A stretch of 47,284 nucleotides of DNA from Pelomyxa schiedti (lineage: Eukaryota; Protista; Evosea), in contig JAHLWZ010000776.1 in assembly GCA_020536535.1 (NCBI GenBank), positions 1-47,284 of the forward strand, in the 5' to 3' direction. Below, in pieces: positions 9,053 through 20,500 of the stretch (position 1 is the first letter of the stretch; each line of letters starts with the position of its first letter). A program made the translations under genes and the position numbers. A model generated the notes under the pieces. It made no database searches and was not told the origin of the DNA. It saw only the letters and a list, made by a program, of their open reading frames with translations.

Positions 9053-11953
9053 ATGGAGTCAGACAAGGAGCAAGCAACAGAGACAATAAAGGGAGAGAAT
9101 GAGGGTGATAACAGACACGAGACCGGTGATTGCAACACTCAGTTGGGAGGAGAGGTGGCCGTGGATGTGGTAGACGAAAGCCGAGGCGGAAGAGAGCTCG
9201 AGGGCGAGGGCGAGGGAGAGGACGAGGACGAGGACGAGGAGAGCGCCGGAGATACTGATGCTTATGAAGAAGGCAGTAACTGCCCTGAGGAGGAGAGTGA
9301 GGTTGCAGAGAGTGCTGCTGGTAGCGAAATTGGCCAAGAGGGTGGAGCGGAGGAGTTGGAAGCGGCAGGGAACTACAGTGCCCCAGTGCCACAGGCTAAT
9401 CCGGCCAAGCAGAAAAGAAACGCGGCGTTCAAGGCGTTTAGGTTCAAAATGAAGCTCCTGGGAGTGTTTATCCTGGTTAATGTAAGTGGAAGGAACTTGA
9501 CGGAGAGGGGAGAAAACCCTACATTCTAATGTCTTGTTAAAGGTGGTGTTTGTTCTTATGACACAGATGTTGCAAGCAAAGTACACCGGTTACATATTTC
9601 TTGGATGTGCGGATCCTGCTAACTGTTTGTGTACTTTCCAATAAATCTTGTCTTCTAGATATCATACTTTCAGCTTTACCCAAATTTCTCTTTGGCTCTC
9701 TTTTGGCGAAATGCCAACCGAGGTGGAATACACACAGAACTAGGCGCAAAGAAAAAGGTGCCAAAGAGTGGAAGATAGAGGCAGAGCCAGGTAAAATAGA
9801 TGCTTTATACTGGTCTAACGTTGGTAGTTTTGTGTCCCCGTTGTAATAATGATGCTGCCGGGCAAGTGAAGTGTCCAACTTGCAGTGAAGAGCTGGACAT
9901 TATAGGTTGACATATATTTGCTGGAGCTGGTCTAATCTTATGCAAAAGGGCATCCACCACTTGTCACGGCTTGTGTTACTGTACATCATGAAGATTCAAC
10001 AGGTCTAGAGTCGGGAGTGGCATCTTTTGAAGAAGCAGAATTGCCTTTTCCAGCTCAGCTATGCCAACTGGTGTACATCATTGATGGGAGATTTAATGGC
10101 AGAGGTAATTCCTTTTTGAGGTGCTGGGAGTAACCTCACATGCAGGTGAGTTTGACACAGTGCAATTCGACACAACCCGCTTCCTCTTATGCCGTCTCTT
10201 TCATTGCCCAGAGTCTCTGTGTATAACATCTCCATCTCATTACGACTCTGCTCCATTTGTTCCCTCTTCCCCTGGTGTAAGACATGCAGTACTGCCCACC
10301 ATGCTAGTTGATGGAACAGCGGTGTACAGAGGATTCCTTGAAAGGGGTATGCAATCTCTTATTTCTTCAGCTGGGTTCATTCTTGTAGGCATACCTTTTG
10401 TTGTTTTACTCAAGAGACAAAACAAAGGAAAGAGGCACTCGCACCAACAATTTTTCCAGTATATGGAAGCGTCAATAATTACACAAACACTAAATGCGAT
10501 AATGGTGCGCCTGTTGCAAACCTAAAAATTCCTGAAATATGCTCTAGTTTGTTGACAGTGATGTTGTTTTCTCCTGGAAGAACCACAATCAAGGAATGCG
10601 ACTTATGTATGAATTTCTGATGGCAAGACCAAATTTGGGTGGTGCCTGTGGGGAAATTGAAGTGTGGAAATGGACAAAGAATCCTATCACAATAACGCAG
10701 TACTTTGAGTACAAGAGCAACCAGTTTTTAGCAAAAACTTTTGAGAGCTGGTTTGGAATGGTAACTTGACAATACCTTTTATTGAAATCTCACCATGATG
10801 TTAAGGTGACCTGCCTTCCTGTAAGTCTTTACGGTTTCAAAAGGAATACCAACCATTATTTGACATAGGGTGCCTTTTGTATGGTTCGGCCGTGCGCATT
10901 GGAGGATGTACTCAATAATTACCTTCAAGTAGCTAATAGTGTAAGTGATCCCTCTAATCAGCGATAATTAATAATACTCTGCAAGATTCTTGAGAAGAAT
11001 CAACTAGGTTAATTCTCAATTTCAACGTAAAAAAAACCCCCAACAACAACAAAAAAAAAAACCCCACAGACCTAGGTGAAGACCGTACACTCACCACGCT
11101 ATTGCTGCAAGCCGGTTGGAACACAGGCTACATACCCGGCGCGAGGGCCCTCACAGAGGTGCCCCAGACTCTAATCACGCTCATCCGGCAGCGCCGCCGC
11201 TGGATAAACTCCACAATCGTAAACATGGTAAGCTTGTCCCTTCTCCCTATCCCTGTATATCTCCCCCCAATTTCATTTTCCATATCTCCCCAATTCAGTT
11301 TTCTCCTACTATTTCCCCTAATCCTCCTCCCCCTCTCCCCCAAACTGACTTTTGATCCCCATCCCACAAGTGGCTTTTGCTGCGGCACTCGACGCGGTGG
11401 GTCACAGCGCTGCCGCTGCTAGTGTCGCTCGCGGTGGAGCTGGTGTCGAGCTTCATACTGCCGACGGCGGTGCTGATGCTGTTCTTCCAGATGGGCGCCT
11501 CCGTGGGCCTGCATCCCACAATAGTCGTGGCGGTCGTGGTGGCGTGGGTGGTGGCCCTCGTGACCCTGTCGCTCACGGCGCAGATCGACCGCGTCAAGTA
11601 CGCCTTCGAGGCGTCGTCGATCATCGGCGCCGGGCTCATCGTGCTCATGATGGTGTACACTGTGCAGCACTTTGACGCCTTTGTGACCAAGTACTGGGCC
11701 GAGCTCGTCGTGGTCGTTGGGTGGGTGGGTATGTAGTTCCTCGTCTCACGTTTTCCGGCCGGCTAACTAGCTCTCCCACAATTTTTTAGGGATAGTGGTG
11801 ATTTCGTCGCTGATACACAGGCAGTTTGTGTCGGTGCTTGGCGTGGTGGCGCCGGTGTGCTGGCTACTGTTGAGTCCCACAATGTACGTGGTGGTGCCGA
11901 TCTACGCCATATGCAACGTGGACGATGTCTCTTGGGGCACAAGAGGCAGCTGA
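9053..11953 (+). CDS. Chitin synthase (GT2), acidic N-terminus, multi-exon
   Basis: FVDSD, GGACGEIEV, FESWFGMVT-CLPG, LGEDR (about 11072), QRRRWINS (about 11190), a C-terminal TM block and terminal NVDDVSWGTRGS-TGA (11951-11953). Confidence 0.93.
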
Positions 11954-12107
11954 GAACTCTAGAAGCGAAAAATAACTTTATGTTGCGTCAGTTTCGTTTC
12001 CAACTTTCTTCTTCAGACTCTTCCACCGCAGCACCATCCATCAGAGAAACTCGTGGTTTTCTTTTTTGCACGAAAAAGAGCCGTTAGTCAAAAGAGAAAA
12101 ACCACGG

Positions 12108-14582
12108 ATGCAGTTTCTGCAAGAGGTGTTTGGCCCTACGTTCTCCACAACGCCACCTGCGCGTAGTGACAGTGCGGCACGAATACGGAGCCAGCGGCGG
12201 TGCCCCAACTCCGCTGCACACTCCCCCACCGCGACCAGCTCCACCAGCAGTCCCCTGCTCCCCTCGCCGCCGCCTTCGTCCGCCTCCAGCGCGAGCCTGC
12301 CGCCTCCGGCGACAACGGCCGCGCGCCCCACTGCTGGGCCCACCACCCGCATCTCCACCGGCGCCTCCGTCCTCACCGACACCAAGCTGGCCACCACCGA
12401 CGCGGTGGAGCGCTGCGCCCGGTCCCCCGGCTCCGGCTCCGGCTCGGCTTCCTCCTCGGGCTCCCCTGGGCTGGTGCTGGTGGCAGCTACGAGCGGGCAC
12501 GACCCCGCGGTGGTGTCCGCCGTCGTGCGGGGCATGTGCCCGGGCGCCGTGGTTGCGGGGTGCAGCACGTGCCAGGGCGTGATGACTGAGACCGGCGTGG
12601 CTTCTTCGCCCGACTCGTCTCAGGTTTGTTGGCGGTCCCGGACTTATCTGCTACTTGATTGGGGTTTTGTAACGGCTTATGGGAGTTGGTTGCCCTTGAC
12701 AGAGAAATGGCTGCAACTATCTTTTCACTTTTTATGTACCTAACGTTGGTGTTTTATCCTCTGCTTTTTTTCCCTTTAGGCTGTTGGAGTATGGATGTGC
12801 ACTGACGAACGTGGGAAGTTTTCTTCTTGTGCTGAGGAAATGGACACTTCACCTGAAAACAGATTCTCTGAGGCTGCTGCGAAGCGGGCAGCGACAAGAG
12901 CTGCCACAGAGGCTCTTGCACAATTGGATGAACGCAAGCCAACACTGATTTGGGTACAAACAGCCCCTGGTTATGAGGAGAGTGTACTAGCTGGAGTGGA
13001 GTCTGTTGTAGGTTCTGATGCCCTAATTGCAGGAGGAAGTGCGGCAGATAATACTGTCTCGGGTGAGTGGTGGCAGCTGTGCAATGACAGAGTTGATCAG
13101 TTTTTCCCCTCCACGCTCTAACCCTATTCAGGTGTACAAAAATGCTGTTGTAGTTACAATGATGGTTACCGATGCAGATGCCTTTCCCGTTTTTGGTAGT
13201 TGCTATCAGGCTACAAGCCACTCTGGGATAGTTACAAGATGCAGTGGACGTGTACTCAATGAAATTGATGACAAGCCTGCAGCTGAAGTTTACAACCGGT
13301 AGCAGTTTTAAGGCTTTACATGTCTAAGTCTGCATGAAGGTGGACAGGCTATCTTATTTCTGACAGCCCTCGCCCGCCTATTGGTGTTTACTTGGGGCCA
13401 AGCACGGTAAGAATTCTAACCCACTGATGTTATGTGTCTCCAACACTGTGTTAGGTGTTTCCTCTTGGAAAGTTTTTTGGAACTGAAAAATCCAATGGTG
13501 AGGATATGTATGAGCTTATGCATCCCCATCGCATTGAAGAAGATGGCAGCCTCAGTGTATTTGCCAATGTTACCAAAGGAATGAGAGTTCACCTCATGGC
13601 TGCAACAACACGACAGGTAATGCATAGTGCAACATTTGCCAACCCCACTATGCCCCAAGAAGATAACCTCTTATCTGTTCTCTCAGATAACCAATGGAAT
13701 TGGGTCCAAGATTTCCGCAGCAGTAAGAGACTTGGCTCCTTTCAATGAATCCGCCATTGTGGGAAGCCTGATGGTTTTCTGTGCCGGTTGTATGATGCAC
13801 GTCAAGGCCTCTCACGGCCTTGCCTCAGTTGCCCAAAAGATAAAGCAATCTACCAACGGCGCCCCGTTTATGGCAATGCACCCTTTCGGAGAACAGGGCA
13901 GATTCCCCGCGTGCGTGGTCGGCAACACTGAGCACAAGGTAAACTTCCTTTTTCTATCGTTCCCTTTCAAAGTTCTAACTCCGAGTTCTCACCGCAGGCG
14001 GCGATAGGCCACGGCAACTTGATGTTCTCTGCCGTGATATTTGGCAAGGCCACGTTCGGGCAGACTGCACGAGCGGACGTGTTCTTCTCGTACTGCTGGG
14101 GGGCCAAGGGGTCCCCAACGCAGTCCCTCGTGAAGACCACGGCGGACAGCCTGCGTCGCGAGGCCAAGGTCACGGTGTGGTGGGACGTGGAGCGCATGGG
14201 GGCGGGCCAGAACCTCGACGCCGAGATGCGCATGGGCGTGCAGTCCGCCTCGGTGTTCCTGCTGTTCCTGGACGAGGCGTACGGGGGCTCCCACAATTGC
14301 CAGGCCGAGTACCGCTACGCCCTGGAGTTTGGCACCCCGATCGTGCCGGTGCTGCTCCCCGGGTACCTGGCCTCCCGCCGGGCCAAAGGGGGGATTCCTC
14401 AGAATCAGTGGTGGCCGGAATCCATGCCGGAGCTGCAGGGCCTGCTGTACTGTGACTTTGGAGACGAGGAGGCGCAGCAACGAAATTTCGCGGGGCTGAT
14501 GCACCAGGTTGACAACTTCAGGCGTCTCAGGCACCAGAAGAAAGTCTCGTTGCTACCTGAGACTCCCGGCGATTCCCTCTGA
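12108..14582 (+). CDS. FIST_N-FIST_C-TIR fusion protein
   Basis: FIST_N: GCSTCQGVMTETG, APGYEESVLAG, GGSAADNTVSGEW. FIST_C: EIDDKPAAEVY, FPLG, VFCAGC, FGEQG, HGNLMFSAVIFG. In the same last exon (13998-14582) a TIR follows: DVFFSY, VWWDVERMGAG, SASVFLLFLDEAYGGSHNCQAEYRYA, PIVPVLL. Confidence 0.87.
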
Positions 14583-14690
14583 TTTTTTTTGTGACAACCC
14601 TCAAATTGGAATGTCGTGTAAAATCACAACATCAAATAAAATACAGCTTCTCTCCTTACGGGGGGGATCTACTCTTTCGTAAACACAGCT

Positions 14691-16010
14691 ATGGTTGACG
14701 ACATGTACAAAAACAGTTACGGTGCGGCGGTGAGCCCTCATCTTTGTTATTTCATTTGCGTGAAGTCGTTGGGGCATACGCCGCGTGAGAGTTTGTTTTT
14801 ACTTGTTTGAAGGTCACAGCACTGTACTTCACGGCAGAAGTTGCGTGCATTGCGTCATTTATCGCGGAGCGCAGGAGGAAGCACAAAACTGATTACCACA
14901 ATGCACAGTACCTCCCCAGGTCTAAAGTGAGCATTTTCTATATCTCACTTTGTGCTTTCTTATTAGGTGTGCCTTTTTGTTACCATTTTCCACTAAGATT
15001 GTTAGTGAGAATTATTGGATGCTCCGTGCGCTTACTATTTTTCAATTTGGCTGAAGAAAAAGACTATTTTGACGATCTTACTTTTGTTTTTGAGAGAACA
15101 GGGAGTGCGCTTTTCTTCACCAGTTACACTGTTGTTTTATTTTTTTGGTAAGAATGCACCTTCTGTGAAATCTTTAACTCTTTTTCCTTTTAATAAAAGG
15201 GCTGAAATGACCCATAAGAGCTATGTTTCTGCAACGGGGTTTCTTCCTAGGTTGAAATGGGTGTTCATCTCATTAAATGCACTTGTTTATGCTTGTGTCT
15301 TGGGCATCACTGTTCTATGTGTCCTACTGCAAGTACTTTACCCTTTGAATTTCCTTCCATCTGACCGACTTGAGGATTCTAATATTTCTGATTCTATATA
15401 CTACTCTATCAACTTATACTTCGGTAAGTCTTCAAATCTGTGGATATCTTGCTTTATGATTTACAGAATCGTTTATTAGTATTTCCATCTCCATTGCCTA
15501 CACGGTGTATGGACTTCGTCTTGTTTCAGCAGAAAAGAAAAAACTACCCCATGAACGGGTAACATCAAATTCCTCTGCCTGGAAATGGGTAAGAAAAGGA
15601 CCTGTTTCATTATTAAGTGGATAACAATTAATTGACTGTGAAGAGTGACATCTTGTAACAACCAAAAGTTTCTATTTTGTACAGTGACTTTCACTGCATG
15701 CTTTGCACTTCGCTCTGTGATGTTTTTCTTTTGGTCACTATATGACCAAGAGATGAGGTTTGTGATATTTGTGAGCTTAGCTTTTGTGATACCGGAACTA
15801 GTTTCATCCGTTCTACAATGTAACCACTTATCGTCTTTTTACTTCTCCAACTTATCTTATTCCTTTGCAGTATTACTGGCAAATATCTCCATGAAGGCTG
15901 AAGAACAACTTGTCTCCTATGTCAATTGGTTATACACTGTATCAGAAATTGGCTCCTCCAAAGACTATGAACACTTTCCAATCAACAAAAAACGCACTAT
16001 CAACAACTAG
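14691..16010 (+). CDS. THH1/TOM1/GPR137-like (DUF1084) multi-pass membrane protein
   Basis: Multiple spliced TM exons. SALFFTSYTVVLFFW|AEMTH resembles TOM1 LFFSTYTLLVLFWAEIYH; also TACFALRSVMFF and FVIPELVS. Exon boundaries are approximate. Confidence 0.65.
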
Positions 16011-16169: not shown

Positions 16170-17387
16170 ATGGGCAATACGGCACCTCAGAAGGGAAGCA
16201 AGTCCAAACGACGAGAGATAAAAATATTGCTACTGGGGGCTGGGGACTCTGGCAAAAGCACCCTGGTGAAACAGATGCACGTAATTCACCTGGAGGGGTT
16301 CACCGACGCGCAAAAGAAGGAGTTCCGACCCATAATTTACAGCAACTTGATCTCCTTCATGGTGACGTTGGTGCAGGCCACCCGAGACTTCAGTATTCCC
16401 GTGAGTCCGGGCAACGAGGCCGCTGCACAGAGATTTCTGCAAAAAGATAAATTCGGAGTTGCCAGTCTAAACCCGGAAATAGCGAGGGACATAAAGATAT
16501 TATGGTACTCCCACTTAATAGAGCACATTTCACTCTTGCTTTATTTGTTTTTGGGAATTACCCCTAACCACACCTGCTCCTACTTTTTTTTTTTTTTGTT
16601 AAAACAAATAAAGATATAACTAACTCTTGTTTATAGGAGTGATCCGGGTATCCTGGCAGCGTTTGCACGTGCCAGAGAATTTCAGCTTCCTGACAGTGCT
16701 GCTTATTATTTCAAGAGTATTGACAGGCTTGCAGCCCCTGATTATATGCCGACTGACACAGATATCCTGCACACTCCATCACATACAACCGGGTTCAATG
16801 AAGTCGTGTTCCACAGTCATAATGAGAGGTTCCGTGTGGTGGATGTTGGTGGTCAGCGGTCAGAGCGCCGTAAGTGGGTTCAGTGCTTCCAAGATGTGAG
16901 TGCCGTAGTGTTTTGTGCAGCATTGAGCGAGTACGACCTTACTCTATTCGAGAAGGCAGACGAAAACAGAACACATGAAAGCCTCAAACTGTTCCATGAT
17001 GTGTGTGCATCCAAATGGTTTGCAAATTCACAGATATTCCTCTTCCTCAACAAGAAAGACCTGTTTGATCAAAAAGTATCCACCTCCCCACTTTCCATCT
17101 ACTTCCCACAATACTCTGGACCAAACGAACCCGATCCCGCCGCGGAATTCATCAGAGACTTGTTCCTAACCACTGCAAGCTGTGGCCGCGAAGTCCAAGT
17201 ATTCTACACATGCGCAACCAATTCCGACAATGTCCGGGAGGTATTCAACATGGTTCTACAGAAACTACTCCAACATGCTGCGGCCAACGCAGAGGCTGAG
17301 GCCGCTGCAGCCTCTGCCTCATCCACAACAACAACTTCAACATCCTCCACACTGCAATCCTCAGGAGGACTCTCTAGGGGCTCGTAG
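16170..17387 (+). CDS. Heterotrimeric G-protein alpha subunit, atypical (switch-I Arg replaced by Pro, short N-terminus, low-complexity C-tail)
   Basis: KILLLGAGDSGKSTLVKQM, DVGGQRSERRKW, LFLNKKDLF, TCAT. One intron with donor near 16505 and acceptor near 16636. Confidence 0.95.
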
Positions 17388-17531: not shown

Positions 17532-20500
17532 TCAAGGAGAGAACCAAGAGGGACGATAGCTAGATAGAGCTTGGATATGGCCTTCTATGCTCTCATTGTC
17601 ATGCACCCCAGAAGCCGCGGCTATGCTAAAGTACTTTTGCGCCGTGGGCTGGTCAGCCAAGCCGCCAAGGCCAACTTGCCACATTCTTCCGAGCTGCCAT
17701 GCCGCAAATGCATGGGCCGGATTCGCAGTTGTGGGAGTCGCGGCCATCTCGTACACCGTGCGGGCTTGTTCCAGGCTGAGGGGTACTCCCAGGCCTTGCT
17801 CGTATCTCAGCCCCAGTTCGTACATAGATTCCTTCTTATCTGTTGTTAGGTCAACGAAAAGCTGTGCTATATCGTCTCCCATTGCTGCTGCGGAAGCAAA
17901 TAGAAGCGCGGCTCGGTCCGGGTCCGCGGCTAGGCCATCGCCTCCTTCCAGGAGCCAAAAGGCTAATTCCTTTGCCGCTTCCGGAGAACCATTGTCCGTG
18001 GCTTTTTGAAGCAGTTGTTCGGCATCGTGGGTATCCAGTGGTGCTATATCCGCTTGGGAGCCGTCCCGGCAAAGTTGTGACTTGAAGACCATGACTTCAG
18101 GCACACTACTATCTATTGCCTTCTTCAACATTTTGCGTGCACGGGATCGGCTTGTTTTCATTCCACATTCGCCATACATATAGCCTCTAAGGAGAGCCAC
18201 AGTCCCCTTACCATTTCCGCTTTTGTGAGCTTGCTTGTATAAAGCCGCTGCTTGCTTTTCATTTGGTGCCATATCATCACCTCCGTTTCGGTACAAGTCT
18301 GCAAGAGCAATAGTGGCAGCTTGAGACCCGGCAGAGCTGGCTTTTAGCAGCCAATTTGCAGCCTTAAGAACGGATTGCTCTACGCCTAAGCCCTGTATGT
18401 GACAGTGTGCGATGTGGTACATGGCCTCAGTGTTCCCGATGTTAGCGGCTTTCTCCCAGAAACCGGCAGCCTTTCCGATATCTTTGTCAACTCCCGTGCC
18501 AAAAAAATGGCATTTCCCAAGAACAACCAGTGAGTCTGGTTGTAATGCATTGGCTCCAGCAGTTAAAATCTTCAGAGCAGCTTGTACATCAGAAAGACCG
18601 CCTGCGCCAGTGAGATTGCACATAGCAAAGGGGATTTGAGCTTGGGGTAATCCCATATCAGCAGCTTTTCTTATCATCCCAGCTGCCTCTGTTGCAGCAG
18701 CACTTTTTATACCTCCCATCTTCTGTGCCTCCGCTATCATTATTTGTGCTAGTCTCGTTGTTGCCCCAATGTGCCCTCTGCCATCTGCAAGGTTATACAA
18801 GTGCCTCGCGGTATTCATATCCTTTGCGCCGCAAAGGCCAGTCTCCAACCACAACCCCCATGAATACATCCCACCAAGGTGATTGGCTATAGACAACCGC
18901 TGCATGAGAGCGGCAGAGGTAGCGACATCCTTCTTTATATGGAATAGCCAGAGCGCAGCAAAGTACGAGCAAGTAGGTCGCACCTCCATTGCGTAATCAG
19001 GGTTCGTTTGGTAAGCAGAAACCAGTAAGTCTCCTTCAGACACAGATTTTGGGTCATTTCGACCAATGATATCATTAAACGCTTTATCTGTGAGAGGGAT
19101 TCCTTGGAATAGAGGAGCGATGCCATACAGACATAAATAATAGTACGCAATATAAGCAGGCTTATATATAAACTTCATTCCAGACATTGCATCATGCAGG
19201 AGATTGAAACACTGGACTTGGTCACCTTTGTCCCACTCCATAAGGGCTATTTGAGTTTTTCCAAATGGTTCGTTAATGTCAGGAGGTGGGAGCGTTACAA
19301 TAGCTCCAGGTACCGTTGGGGGAATAGGCTGAGTGGGGGTAGTGACCGGCTGTGATACAGAAGAGGTGAGTGTTGATACTGCTACAGCTGCGGTGACGGA
19401 GGCATTCAGTTTTGAGCTTCTGTGCTTATGCTTCTGTGCAGAATCCGTTGCTGGTGAACCCGGCTCCGATTGAGTCGGAAGCGTTGGTGATTGCGGTGCT
19501 ACAGGAACCACAGGAGTCTCTGCGAGGGCTGGAGGTGTTGTAGGACTGGCTTGGGACCGGTGCTTATGCTTATGGTGGGTGGATGCTGCAGGGTCCTGAC
19601 CTGGAGCAGTAGTCGAGACGGGGGTGGGAGTTGGTGTTGGTGTTGCCGTTAGTGTTGGGGTTTGCCTTGGTGAAGGGCTTGCAGGATTGGCAGCTGCAGT
19701 TGGTGGAGGATTTGCAGCCGGAGTTGGTGGAGGAGCAGTTGCAGAATTTGTCGGGGTGGATGTAGCTGTTGCCAATGGAGGTAAAAGCTCTTGCAAAAGC
19801 AGGGGTGATTCTTGCATATCGAGATCTACCACAATAAGATCTGTTGTATCCAGAACACCAGTCACAATGAAATTTGTTTCTGGCTCCAATAAAATCTCTG
19901 TTTGGGGCAAAAACAAGTTTTGATCAGTAAGAAGTCTTGAGGAAGTGCGAACCTCACCTCGTTCACTGGGGATGCAAGAATAAGGTGATATATCATAGCC
20001 CCAGACTTTCCCTCGGATGACAAAAAGTGTTCCCTTACAAACACCACTTTCTTTATCTGTAAGAAACTGTTTTGTGACTTGCATTTCCAGGGATGTGGAG
20101 CACAGCGTGTGCCACGTGATTGTGTTTCCTGCCAAGCAGTGTAAGGTCATGACTTGGTGAGAAACAACAAAACAGCAAAAAGGCAGAAACCTGGATGGTA
20201 GTGAGTATCATCAACCTGTACTTTCTTTGTAATTCCTCTAAATAAAGCTTTGCCAGGAGGGATAAATGGAGGAAGAGATCGGAGTGCTTTGAGTAACATG
20301 TAGATGTATCCGCGCCATCGTCGAAGCTCCAGTGTATTACGTTGGAACAGTGTGCGGTTTAGCCGGAAATAGGGGTTGTCTTCAGGTGATGGCTCTCCAA
20401 AGTCAAACGAGTAGAGTGCAATTGCACCAGCCCCTAACAGTGGTAAAGAGAGTGTCTGGCTTGCAATTCAACATGTTACATACCCTGGTCATCAAGAGTA

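What the first reader, a model, noticed from the sequence alone, without database searches (positions are those of the whole stretch)
12108..14582. FIST sensor fused to a catalytically intact TIR domain: candidate ligand/NO-gated NADase
Seen: a complete FIST_N and FIST_C, with the FIST_C end (HGNLMFSAVIFG) and the TIR start (DVFFSY) in one exon (13998-14582), so the fusion does not depend on a splice guess. The TIR has S-x-x-C-x-x-E (SHNCQAE, GAG at 14307-14309). Established: this Glu is the catalytic residue of SARM1, plant, Thoeris and other bacterial TIR NADases; FIST (NosP) domains are small-molecule or heme/NO sensors usually coupled to kinase, MCP or GGDEF outputs. Inference: a one-component signalling or immune switch in which ligand binding oligomerises the TIR to cleave NAD+ or make ADPR isomers. 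I know of no characterised FIST-TIR, but cannot confirm novelty without a search.
Basis: partly seen in the sequence, partly recalled or inferred. Interest (0 to 1): 0.85.

Follow-up and report, generated by a model that had tools for sequence, protein, structure and literature searches.

The report
FIST sensor fused to TIR enzyme domain
An anaerobic amoeba (Pelomyxa schiedti) has a real seven-exon gene joining a bacterial-type FIST sensor domain to a TIR domain that keeps the residues of NAD-cleaving TIR enzymes. The same uncharacterised fusion occurs in haptophyte algae, so it is a new sensor-plus-TIR combination, but neither its ligand nor its activity has been tested.

Summary
Window 12108-14582 (+) is a seven-exon gene whose translation equals GenBank KAH3758383.1, "FIST N domain protein" of Pelomyxa schiedti (686 aa).

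Pfam gives FIST (87 bits), FIST_C (51 bits) and TIR_2 (55 bits), all above their cut-offs. The last FIST strand (HGNLMFSAVIFG), a 10-residue linker and the whole TIR lie in one exon. Glu596 is the GAG at 14307-14309 and aligns with SARM1 E642 and the Cat1 glutamate.

- The motif is S-x-N-C-x-x-E. Asn replaces the usual Trp four residues before the Glu, so "catalytically intact" is too strong.
- The FIST is not NosP: it scores 48 bits against a 450-bit cut-off. NO or heme gating is therefore unsupported.
- The architecture is not unique. About ten proteins, one cluster including Prymnesium polylepis sequences and the rest from unassigned environmental contigs, share it and the same linker, which suggests a single origin.

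The closest FIST, from Mastigella, has no TIR. No paper in the searched library describes a FIST-TIR.

Most likely reading: a one-protein sensor and effector in which the FIST controls TIR assembly and NAD+ cleavage. That function is inferred, not shown. I class it as a new variant of a known kind, of moderate interest.

The parts
12108..12623 (+). Exon 1. Start codon, then a Ser/Pro/Ala/Thr-rich region with no Pfam match (residues 1 to about 115), then the start of the FIST N domain (from residue 122). GC 72%.
   Evidence: FIST profile positions 2-43; no Pfam hit in residues 1-121.
12780..13091 (+). Exon 2. Middle of the FIST N domain, including the GGSAADN motif.
   Evidence: FIST profile 72-140. 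Invariant G257, A261 and D262.
13132..13298 (+). Exon 3. End of the FIST N domain. It follows a 40-nt GT-AG intron (13092-13131).
   Evidence: profile positions 142-189 continue directly from position 140 in exon 2; the model translates to P0001.
13340..13406 (+). Exon 4. FIST_N/FIST_C junction (W333-T-G...).
   Evidence: The translation matches P0001 only with the acceptor at 13340. Homologues share YNRWTG.
13455..13616 (+). Exon 5. First half of FIST_C, including the invariant H377-P378.
   Evidence: FIST_C profile 24-67.
13687..13938 (+). Exon 6. Second half of FIST_C (FCAGCMM 439-445, HPFGEQG 473-479).
   Evidence: FIST_C profile 81-131.
13998..14582 (+). Exon 7, carrying four features in one exon: the last FIST strand HGNLMFSAVIFG (14010-14045); the conserved 10-residue linker KATFGQTARA; the TIR domain (residues 519 to about 675); and the stop codon at 14580-14582.
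   Evidence: TIR_2, 58.6 bits; AF2 pLDDT 87.8; Z 14-16 to solved TIRs.
14307..14309 (+). GAG codon for Glu596, the putative catalytic glutamate in the motif S590-H-N592-C593-Q-A-E596.
   Evidence: One search gives the coordinates. One search aligns it to SARM1 E642 and the Cat1 Glu. It is invariant in 10 FIST-TIR proteins and nearly invariant in 100 subfamily TIRs.
14184..14207 (+). D555-V-E557-R-M-G-A-G562. These are the equivalents of SARM1 D594, E596 and the BB-loop glycine G601.
   Evidence: Profile alignment to SARM1. D and G are invariant in the FIST-TIR family. Coordinates.

Best explanation
The gene encodes a cytosolic, single-chain sensor and effector with four parts:
- a disordered Ser/Pro-rich N-terminus;
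- a complete FIST module of the clade whose bacterial members are stand-alone proteins encoded next to histidine kinases;
- a short conserved linker;
- a C-terminal TIR domain of the S-x-N-C-x-x-E subfamily.

Proposed mechanism, by analogy with SARM1 (ARM-SAM-TIR), Cat1 (CARF-TIR), TIR-SAVED and SPARTA: a signal recognised by the FIST releases or promotes TIR-TIR association. That association completes the composite active site around Glu596. The enzyme then cleaves NAD+, either depleting it or making an ADPR-type or cyclic-ADPR-type messenger.

Shown here: the architecture, the folds, the conserved residues and the phyletic pattern.
Inferred: enzymatic activity, control by the FIST and oligomerisation.
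Unknown: the ligand, which could be a small molecule or a protein. There is no evidence for NO or heme.
For: Architecture and one-exon junction.

TIR domain:
- Confident AF2 model (pLDDT 87.8).
- TIR fold at Z 14-16, with SARM1 the closest by identity (22-24%) and rmsd (2.0 A).
- The subfamily profile hits the proven NADases Cat1 (2.4e-21) and SARM1 (4e-13) ahead of MyD88 (about 1e-5), and the Glu aligns.
- Glu596, D555 and G562 are invariant across 10 FIST-TIR proteins.

FIST domain:
- 69 of 91 positions that are at least 90% conserved in the bacterial relatives are kept.
- Confident model (pLDDT 89.5, pTM 0.90), with FBXO22 FIST as the top structural hit.
- The nearest bacterial homologues checked lie directly upstream of HisKA/HATPase_c kinases, so this FIST clade works as an input module.

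Conserved fusion: the fusion and its linker are shared between Pelomyxa and the haptophyte-type proteins, which implies selection on the two-domain unit.

Literature: a 2026 preprint (10.64898/2026.04.20.719644) reports Glu-dependent cADPR production by TIRs from Amoebozoa and other protists.
Against: - No activity data exist for any TIR that I could show to carry Asn at position -4. The usual Trp or Tyr there is replaced by Asn592.
- A conserved Glu is necessary but not sufficient for activity.
- The FIST ligand is unknown, and the protein is not a NosP equivalog.
- The only structurally characterised FIST (FBXO22) recognises a protein.
- The closest FIST, from Mastigella eilhardi (54% identity), has no TIR, so the FIST can function without it.
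- I could not inspect transcript data directly.
- No full-length model was made, so contacts between the two domains are unknown.
Confidence: 0.5

Rival explanations
1. The TIR is a non-enzymatic adaptor. It works as a protein-protein assembly module, as in MyD88 or MAL. The FIST is a protein-recognition module, as in FBXO22. The protein would then nucleate a signalling complex with other Pelomyxa TIR proteins without cleaving NAD+.
For: - Structural matches to the scaffold TIRs (IL-1RAcPb, MyD88, MAL) are tied with the enzyme TIRs at Z 14-16.
- The Trp at position -4 is missing.
- The FBXO22 FIST binds the BACH1 BTB domain through a beta-sheet extension.
- Earlier notes on this genome list other TIR-like genes (not checked by me).
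Against: - Glu596, D555 and the BB-loop Gly are invariant in the family.
- The sequence profile is much closer to Cat1 and SARM1 than to MyD88.
- The 2026 preprint finds that the catalytic Glu predicts activity in many eukaryotic TIRs.
Confidence: 0.25
2. It is specifically a NO- or heme-gated NADase. The FIST would bind heme like NosP, and NO binding would switch the TIR on.
For: - The FIST belongs to the same superfamily as NosP (weak hit to NF041558).
- His377, His497, Cys155, Cys440 and Cys443 are conserved with the bacterial relatives and could ligate a cofactor.
- The bacterial relatives have a gene arrangement like NosP-NahK.
- The organism is an anaerobe that harbours prokaryotic endosymbionts (abstract of PMC10579272).
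Against: - It scores 48 bits against the 450-bit NosP equivalog cut-off, and the nearest bacterial relatives also fail (38-65 bits).
- Cys155 and Cys443 are not kept in the haptophyte-type FIST-TIRs, which have His and Thr/Val there.
- The review PMC8846402 calls the mechanism of FIST ligand binding little known.
Confidence: 0.1
3. It is a gene-model artefact, a dead gene or contaminant DNA. The FIST and TIR would be made as separate products, or the locus would not be expressed.
For: - I inspected no RNA data.
- Two introns are very short (40 and 41 nt).
- Exon GC content is very uneven (43-72%).
- The assembly comes from whole-genome-amplified single cells (PMC8887013).
Against: - The FIST end and the TIR are in one uninterrupted exon.
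- Six introns restore a full-length alignment to the Pfam profiles and to homologues.
- 69 of 91 conserved FIST positions and all key TIR positions are intact.
- In related proteins the same fusion is one continuous ORF, and one is an MMETSP transcript.
- The public model was built with PASA/EVM using transcriptome data.
- Spliceosomal introns exclude a bacterial contaminant.
Confidence: 0.04

Closest known systems
SARM1 / TIR-1 (ARM-SAM-TIR NAD+ hydrolase)
   Same: - An N-terminal sensor domain controls a C-terminal TIR in one chain.
- It is the closest solved TIR by identity (22-24%) and rmsd (2.0 A over about 126 residues, Z about 15).
- The Glu aligns with E642, and D555, E557 and G562 align with D594, E596 and G601.
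   Different: - There are no ARM or SAM domains, and the sensor is a FIST.
- SARM1 W638 corresponds to Asn592.
- SARM1 Y568-R-R corresponds to Y524-C-W.
- No octamerising SAM ring is present, so how the protein would assemble is unknown.
Cat1 (CRISPR-associated CARF-TIR NADase)
   Same: - It is the best sequence-profile match in the PDB (E 2.4e-21).
- A ligand-sensing domain is fused to a TIR that cleaves NAD+ on assembly.
   Different: - The sensor is a CARF domain that binds cA4.
- It is prokaryotic and part of the type III CRISPR system.
- Its motif is S-D-W-C-W-D-E, with the Trp present.
Haptophyte-type FIST-TIR proteins (uncharacterised). One cluster includes Prymnesium polylepis EukProt sequences and an MMETSP transcript; the others are environmental proteins P0007, P0015, P0152, P0276, P0277, P0279 and P0280.
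   Same: - Same domain order, same linker FG[KQR]A.[FY]G...R and same S-x-N-C-x-x-E TIR.
- Shared HPFGEQ signature in the FIST.
- TIR identity is 35-48%.
   Different: - Their FIST domains carry long insertions and are only 31-34% identical.
- In the two encoding contigs examined (P0007 and P0015), which are GC-rich, the gene is one continuous ORF.
- Cys155 and Cys443 are replaced.
- The host lineage is very distant (Haptista versus Amoebozoa).
Bacterial stand-alone FIST proteins next to histidine kinases (the NosP-NahK type of arrangement)
   Same: - 33-39% identity over the whole roughly 390-residue FIST module.
- 69 of 91 highly conserved positions are kept.
- They act as an input domain for a signalling output.
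   Different: - The output acts in trans (a kinase), whereas here it is a fused TIR.
- The protein is not a NosP equivalog (48 against 450 bits).
FBXO22 (F-box + FIST)
   Same: It is the only solved FIST structure and the top Foldseek hit for the FIST model (E 7e-9). It is also a eukaryotic FIST fused to an effector-recruiting module.
   Different: - Identity is only 11-12% and TM-score 0.42-0.52.
- It has an F-box, which is absent here.
- It binds a protein degron, and it belongs to a different FIST clade.
Mastigella eilhardi FIST protein (EukProt EP01105_P011878)
   Same: It is the closest FIST (54-56% identity, sister in the tree with 99% SH-aLRT support). It comes from the same amoebal family and also has a long low-complexity N-terminus.
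   Different: It ends 15 residues after the last FIST strand, with no linker motif and no TIR. Its N-terminus starts MGSGAS.

Membership tests
TIR domain (Pfam TIR_2, PF13676) | Profile HMM score above the gathering threshold | tested here: met
   54.9 bits against a cut-off of 28 on P0001; 58.6 bits on exon 7 alone.
TIR domain (Pfam TIR_2, PF13676) | Flavodoxin-like TIR fold | tested here: met
   AF2 pLDDT 87.8. VIA-align Z 14-16 at rmsd 2.0-2.5 A over 123-136 residues to many solved TIRs.
NAD+-cleaving TIR enzymes (SARM1, plant TIR, AbTir, Cat1, Thoeris ThsB) | Catalytic glutamate on helix alphaC | tested here: met
   E596 aligns with SARM1 E642 and the Cat1 Glu in a profile-to-PDB alignment. 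It is invariant in the FIST-TIR family.
NAD+-cleaving TIR enzymes (SARM1, plant TIR, AbTir, Cat1, Thoeris ThsB) | Aromatic residue (usually Trp) four residues before the Glu (W-x-x-x-E; S-x-W-C-x-x-E) | tested here: not met
   It is Asn592. S-x-N-C-x-x-E is the rule in most of the 150 closest TIRs, while the bacterial WD40-type relatives have Tyr. That this residue matters for catalysis is from my own knowledge of SARM1 W638 and AbTir W204.
NAD+-cleaving TIR enzymes (SARM1, plant TIR, AbTir, Cat1, Thoeris ThsB) | BB-loop glycine and the acidic residues of the betaB-BB region (SARM1 D594, E596, G601) | tested here: met
   D555, E557 and G562 align to them. D and G are invariant in the family.
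NAD+-cleaving TIR enzymes (SARM1, plant TIR, AbTir, Cat1, Thoeris ThsB) | Measured NAD+ hydrolase or cyclase activity that depends on the Glu | not testable with these tools
   This needs a biochemical assay.
FIST sensor domain (Pfam FIST PF08495 + FIST_C PF10442) | Both profile HMMs above the gathering threshold, in order | tested here: met
   FIST 87.4 bits against 23.2 (residues 122-324). FIST_C 51.3 bits against 28.5 (residues 326-480).
FIST sensor domain (Pfam FIST PF08495 + FIST_C PF10442) | FIST fold (three-fold pseudo-symmetric, as in FBXO22) | tested here: met
   AF2 pLDDT 89.5 and pTM 0.90. Top Foldseek hits are FBXO22 (E 7e-9), followed by Toblerone-fold hydrolases. The fold is described in 10.1101/2024.06.03.596960.
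NosP (nitric-oxide-sensing FIST protein, NCBIfam NF041558 equivalog) | Score above the equivalog cut-off | tested here: not met
   48.3 bits against a cut-off of 450. The nearest bacterial relatives also fail, at 38-65 bits.
NosP (nitric-oxide-sensing FIST protein, NCBIfam NF041558 equivalog) | Heme binding and a response to NO | not testable with these tools
   This needs spectroscopy on recombinant protein.
SARM1 family | ARM repeat and tandem SAM domains upstream of the TIR | tested here: not met
   Pfam finds only FIST, FIST_C and TIR_2 in P0001.
FBXO22-type F-box/FIST proteins | N-terminal F-box | tested here: not met
   There is no F-box hit. Residues 1-121 have no Pfam match.
Thoeris ThsB | ThsB-type TIR with a partner ThsA effector | tested here: inconclusive
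   Only a weak PADLOC hit to ThsB1 (23.8 bits, E 5.5e-6). A partner in an operon-like arrangement is not expected in a eukaryote, and I did not look for one.

The most novel reading that the evidence does not exclude
FIST-TIR is a previously unrecognised family of eukaryotic one-component switches with a single origin. It would be shared, by ancient inheritance or by transfer between eukaryotes, between Archamoebae and haptophytes. A metabolite or an infection-derived cue bound by the FIST would directly trigger TIR-catalysed production of a cADPR-type messenger, or NAD+ depletion. If so, it would give the first tractable read-out for what non-NosP FIST domains sense. It would also define a new input class for TIR immunity or signalling in protists, using an active-site variant with Asn in place of Trp.
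Probability: 0.3. Interest if true: 0.75.

Novelty: new variant of a known kind. Interest (0 to 1): 0.55.

Why it matters
Sensor-TIR fusions such as SARM1, Cat1, TIR-SAVED, TIR-STING and SPARTA are a central theme in NAD+-based immunity and cell-death signalling. A FIST input has not been described among them.

FIST is one of the least understood widespread sensor domains. Fusion to an easily assayed enzyme would make its ligand experimentally approachable.

The same fusion, with the same linker, occurs in an anaerobic amoeba and in haptophyte-type marine proteins. In haptophytes, TIR genes respond to giant-virus infection (PMC12489294). This suggests a conserved functional unit, and possibly gene transfer between distant eukaryotes.

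The S-x-N-C-x-x-E active-site variant is also shared with many invertebrate and protist TIRs whose activity I could not find documented.

Tried and rejected
- My first gene model began exon 4 at 13367, giving 677 aa. I rejected it: the public protein and its homologues require 13340 (686 aa).
- A donor at 13063 for intron 2 breaks the reading frame. The 40-nt intron 13092-13131 restores both the frame and Pfam collinearity.
- NosP membership was tested and failed.
- Single-sequence phmmer of exon 7 against the PDB gave only a marginal Cat1 hit (E 0.04). The profile search was needed.
- The TIR phylogeny (153 columns) did not resolve whether the Pelomyxa TIR is sister to the haptophyte-type FIST-TIR TIRs. 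The AU test does not reject that clade (p 0.37), which is not proof of it.
- A scan of viral contigs for FIST-TIR found nothing. It used only two peptide patterns, so its sensitivity was low.
- Literature searches for FIST with TIR gave no relevant paper. The whole-word "FIST" hits appear to be misspellings of "first", judged from titles and abstracts.
- The minus-strand ORFs across the gene (12041-12568 and 13989-14534) have no Pfam hits and look like by-products of GC-rich sequence.
- The neighbouring genes (chitin synthase, G-alpha, Sel1-repeat protein) give no evidence of a functional link.
- I did not search for prokaryotic FIST-TIR fusions that use other TIR subfamilies.
Full report
**What is there**

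The window is eukaryotic DNA with short spliceosomal introns. Reading 11950-14750 and translating the candidate exons gave a seven-exon gene on the + strand. A HMMER search of the last exon against 1.84 billion representative proteins returned a 686-aa protein that is 100% identical over all 194 residues (P0001). The cluster look-up names it KAH3758383.1, "FIST N domain protein [Pelomyxa schiedti]", on a contig of 47,284 bases, the same length as the window.

After I moved the exon 4 acceptor to 13340, my spliced translation equalled P0001 exactly. The exons are 12108-12623, 12780-13091, 13132-13298, 13340-13406, 13455-13616, 13687-13938 and 13998-14582. Searches showed GT-AG boundaries for five introns and the donor of the third; the revised exon 4 acceptor (AG at 13338-13339) was read from the sequence. 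Introns are 40-156 nt. The genome paper says the gene models were built with Augustus, PASA and EVM using single-cell transcriptomes, and it does not mention FIST or TIR (PMC8887013).

**Domains**

Pfam on P0001 gives three families, all above their gathering scores:
- FIST, residues 122-324, 87.4 bits.
- FIST_C, residues 326-480, 51.3 bits.
- TIR_2, residues 520-647, 54.9 bits.

Residues 1-121 are rich in Ser, Pro, Ala and Thr and have no Pfam match.

The last exon begins AAIGHGNLMFSAVIFG. In an alignment of 91 FIST proteins, H497, N499, L500 and M501 are invariant, and the bacterial members end immediately after this strand. So the final strand of the FIST fold, a 10-residue linker (KATFGQTARA) and the TIR (from DVFFSY, 519-524) are encoded without interruption. 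The fusion does not depend on any splice choice.

**The TIR domain**

An AlphaFold2 model built on 100 homologues is confident (pLDDT 87.8, pTM 0.83). Solved TIR domains match at Z 14-16, and scaffold and enzyme TIRs are tied. SARM1 is closest by identity (22-24%) and rmsd (2.0 A over about 126 residues).

A profile of the subfamily searched against PDB sequences ranks the NADases first. Cat1 scores E 2.4e-21 and SARM1 4e-13. PdTIR and AbTir score 1e-10 to 1e-8, and MyD88 only about 1e-5. In those alignments the family's Glu pairs with SARM1 E642 and the Cat1 Glu. The W-x-D-x-E...G-x-G segment (D555, E557, G562) pairs with SARM1 D594, E596 and G601. These residues are invariant in the ten FIST-TIR proteins aligned.

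One departure matters. The canonical S-x-W-C-x-x-E or W-x-x-x-E has Asn592 in place of Trp. This S-x-N-C-x-x-E form is the rule in most of the 150 closest TIRs. Those include proteins of a mollusc (Haliotis) and a cnidarian (Hydractinia), and marine protist transcripts.

I found no experiment that I could tie to this variant. A 2026 preprint reports Glu-dependent cADPR synthesis by TIRs of Dictyostelium purpureum, a choanoflagellate, a cryptophyte and an oomycete (10.64898/2026.04.20.719644). That raises the prior that a protist TIR with the Glu is an enzyme. "Catalytically intact" is therefore plausible but not established.

**The FIST domain**

The model is confident (pLDDT 89.5, pTM 0.90). 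The only solved relatives are human FBXO22 (E 7e-9), followed by the three-fold pseudo-symmetric Toblerone-fold hydrolases. This agrees with the published description of the FBXO22 FIST as three pseudo-symmetric subdomains that bind the BACH1 BTB dimer (10.1101/2024.06.03.596960).

By sequence the domain is far closer to other proteins:
- Mastigella eilhardi FIST (54% identity, no TIR).
- Bacterial stand-alone FIST proteins of about 400 aa (33-39% identity).
- A Rozella allomycis protein that joins 7tm_3 to FIST.

Pelomyxa keeps 69 of the 91 positions that are at least 90% conserved in the bacterial set. Both bacterial relatives that I looked up lie directly upstream of a HisKA/HATPase_c kinase. 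This is the arrangement reported for NosP-NahK (review PMC8846402).

However, the NCBIfam NosP equivalog model scores only 48 bits against a cut-off of 450, and the bacterial relatives fail too. The domain is a FIST input module of a non-NosP clade, and its ligand is unknown. NO or heme sensing is not supported.

**Relatives with the same architecture**

Several of the best TIR hits also align through the FIST tail. Pfam shows FIST, FIST_C or both, followed by TIR_2, in P0004, P0007, P0009, P0015, P0152, P0276, P0277, P0278, P0279, P0280 and P0281.

One cluster contains an MMETSP transcript and EukProt sequences of the haptophyte Prymnesium polylepis. The others come from environmental assemblies. 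In the two contigs I examined, which are GC-rich, the gene is a single uninterrupted ORF.

All of these proteins share the linker FG[KQR]A.[FY]G...R with Pelomyxa. The motif is absent from other TIRs of the same subfamily, and from the bacterial, Mastigella and Rozella FISTs. Archamoebae and the haptophyte-type proteins also share HPFGEQ where bacteria have FTFGEQ.

In the FIST tree, Pelomyxa and Mastigella are sisters (99% support) and the haptophyte-type clade is monophyletic (100%). The two groups meet at one node, opposite Rozella plus the bacteria. The TIR tree is unresolved, and an AU test does not reject a single FIST-TIR TIR clade (p 0.37).

Together these results favour one origin of the fusion. 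The TIR would then have been lost, or not sampled, in Mastigella. Vertical descent with many losses or transfer between eukaryotes could both explain the distribution, and I cannot tell which. No relative was found in the viral contig collection, though that scan had low sensitivity.

**Mechanism**

The best-supported reading is a one-chain sensor and effector. The FIST receives a signal, and the TIR is the output, which needs self-association to form its active site. It then cleaves NAD+ or makes an ADPR-type messenger.

- Shown: the architecture, the folds, the conserved catalytic-site residues and the conservation of the fused unit.
- Inferred: activity, coupling between the domains, and oligomerisation.
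- Main rival: a non-enzymatic adaptor TIR with a protein-binding FIST.
- Specific NO/heme version: unlikely.
- Annotation artefact: very unlikely.

**Surroundings**

Upstream on the same strand is a chitin synthase (Chitin_synth_2 hit at 11102-11422). Downstream are a G-alpha gene (16170-17387, +) and a long Sel1-repeat ORF (17532-20150, -). Nothing ties them functionally to this gene. Earlier notes of this scan propose a five-gene signalling block here, which I did not test.

**Novelty**

The protein is already public and is auto-named from its FIST domain only. No paper in the searched library mentions a FIST-TIR. The G. huxleyi TIR study states that its TIR genes carry no such extra domains (PMC12489294). 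I could not query InterPro architectures.

Sensor-TIR fusions are a known kind, and FIST as the sensor is a new variant. Interest is moderate. The finding is clearly real and gives a testable handle on both FIST ligands and protist TIR signalling. But domain shuffling onto TIR is common, and no function is demonstrated.

Noticed in passing
window 12108-14582 (exons versus introns): GC content differs strongly between the exons of one gene: exon 1 is 72%, exon 7 is 64%, the internal exons (apart from the short exon 4, about 60% in my first model) are 43-53%, and the introns are 40-47%. Similar GC peaks occur elsewhere in the window, at about 7-8 kb, 27-28 kb and 37-38 kb.
   Followed up: partly
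P0193 (Rozella allomycis CSF55, 665 aa): A eukaryotic FIST of the same clade is fused to a class-C GPCR transmembrane domain (7tm_3, 33.3 bits, just under the 33.5-bit cut-off). This is another unstudied eukaryotic FIST architecture.
   Followed up: partly
P0157 (Mastigella eilhardi, 614 aa): The closest homologue of the FIST part has no TIR. It starts MGSGAS, which looks like an N-myristoylation site, followed by about 200 low-complexity residues. The Pelomyxa protein starts MQFLQE and lacks that motif.
   Followed up: no
P0006, P0008, P0011, P0010 (environmental eukaryote contigs): The nearest TIR relatives without a FIST are TIR + EF-hand proteins and a Roc-COR-TIR protein. Many other members have a Cys-x-x-Cys...R-[IV]-x-D-[IV] element just before the TIR. 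This points to a family of differently gated TIRs in protists.
   Followed up: partly
window 11102-11422 (+): An exon of a chitin synthase gene (Pfam Chitin_synth_2, motif RRRW) lies just upstream on the same strand.
   Followed up: partly
window 16170-17387 (+) and 17532-20150 (-): A G-protein alpha subunit gene (two ORF pieces, 87 and 222 bits) and an 872-aa ORF with Sel1 repeats lie downstream. Other notes of this scan discuss them, and I did not evaluate those claims.
   Followed up: no
window about 1100-1250: ORF translations there contain a run of X, which indicates a stretch of N (an assembly gap) in the contig.
   Followed up: no
FIST model mfbd9f75accd4: After FBXO22, the next structural matches are the Toblerone-fold cyclic amide hydrolases (cyanuric acid hydrolase, barbiturase, orotic acid hydrolase; E 1e-5 to 1e-3, TM about 0.3-0.4). 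From my own knowledge, these bind their substrate at the centre of the three-fold pseudo-symmetry. That hints at where a FIST small-molecule pocket might lie.
   Followed up: no
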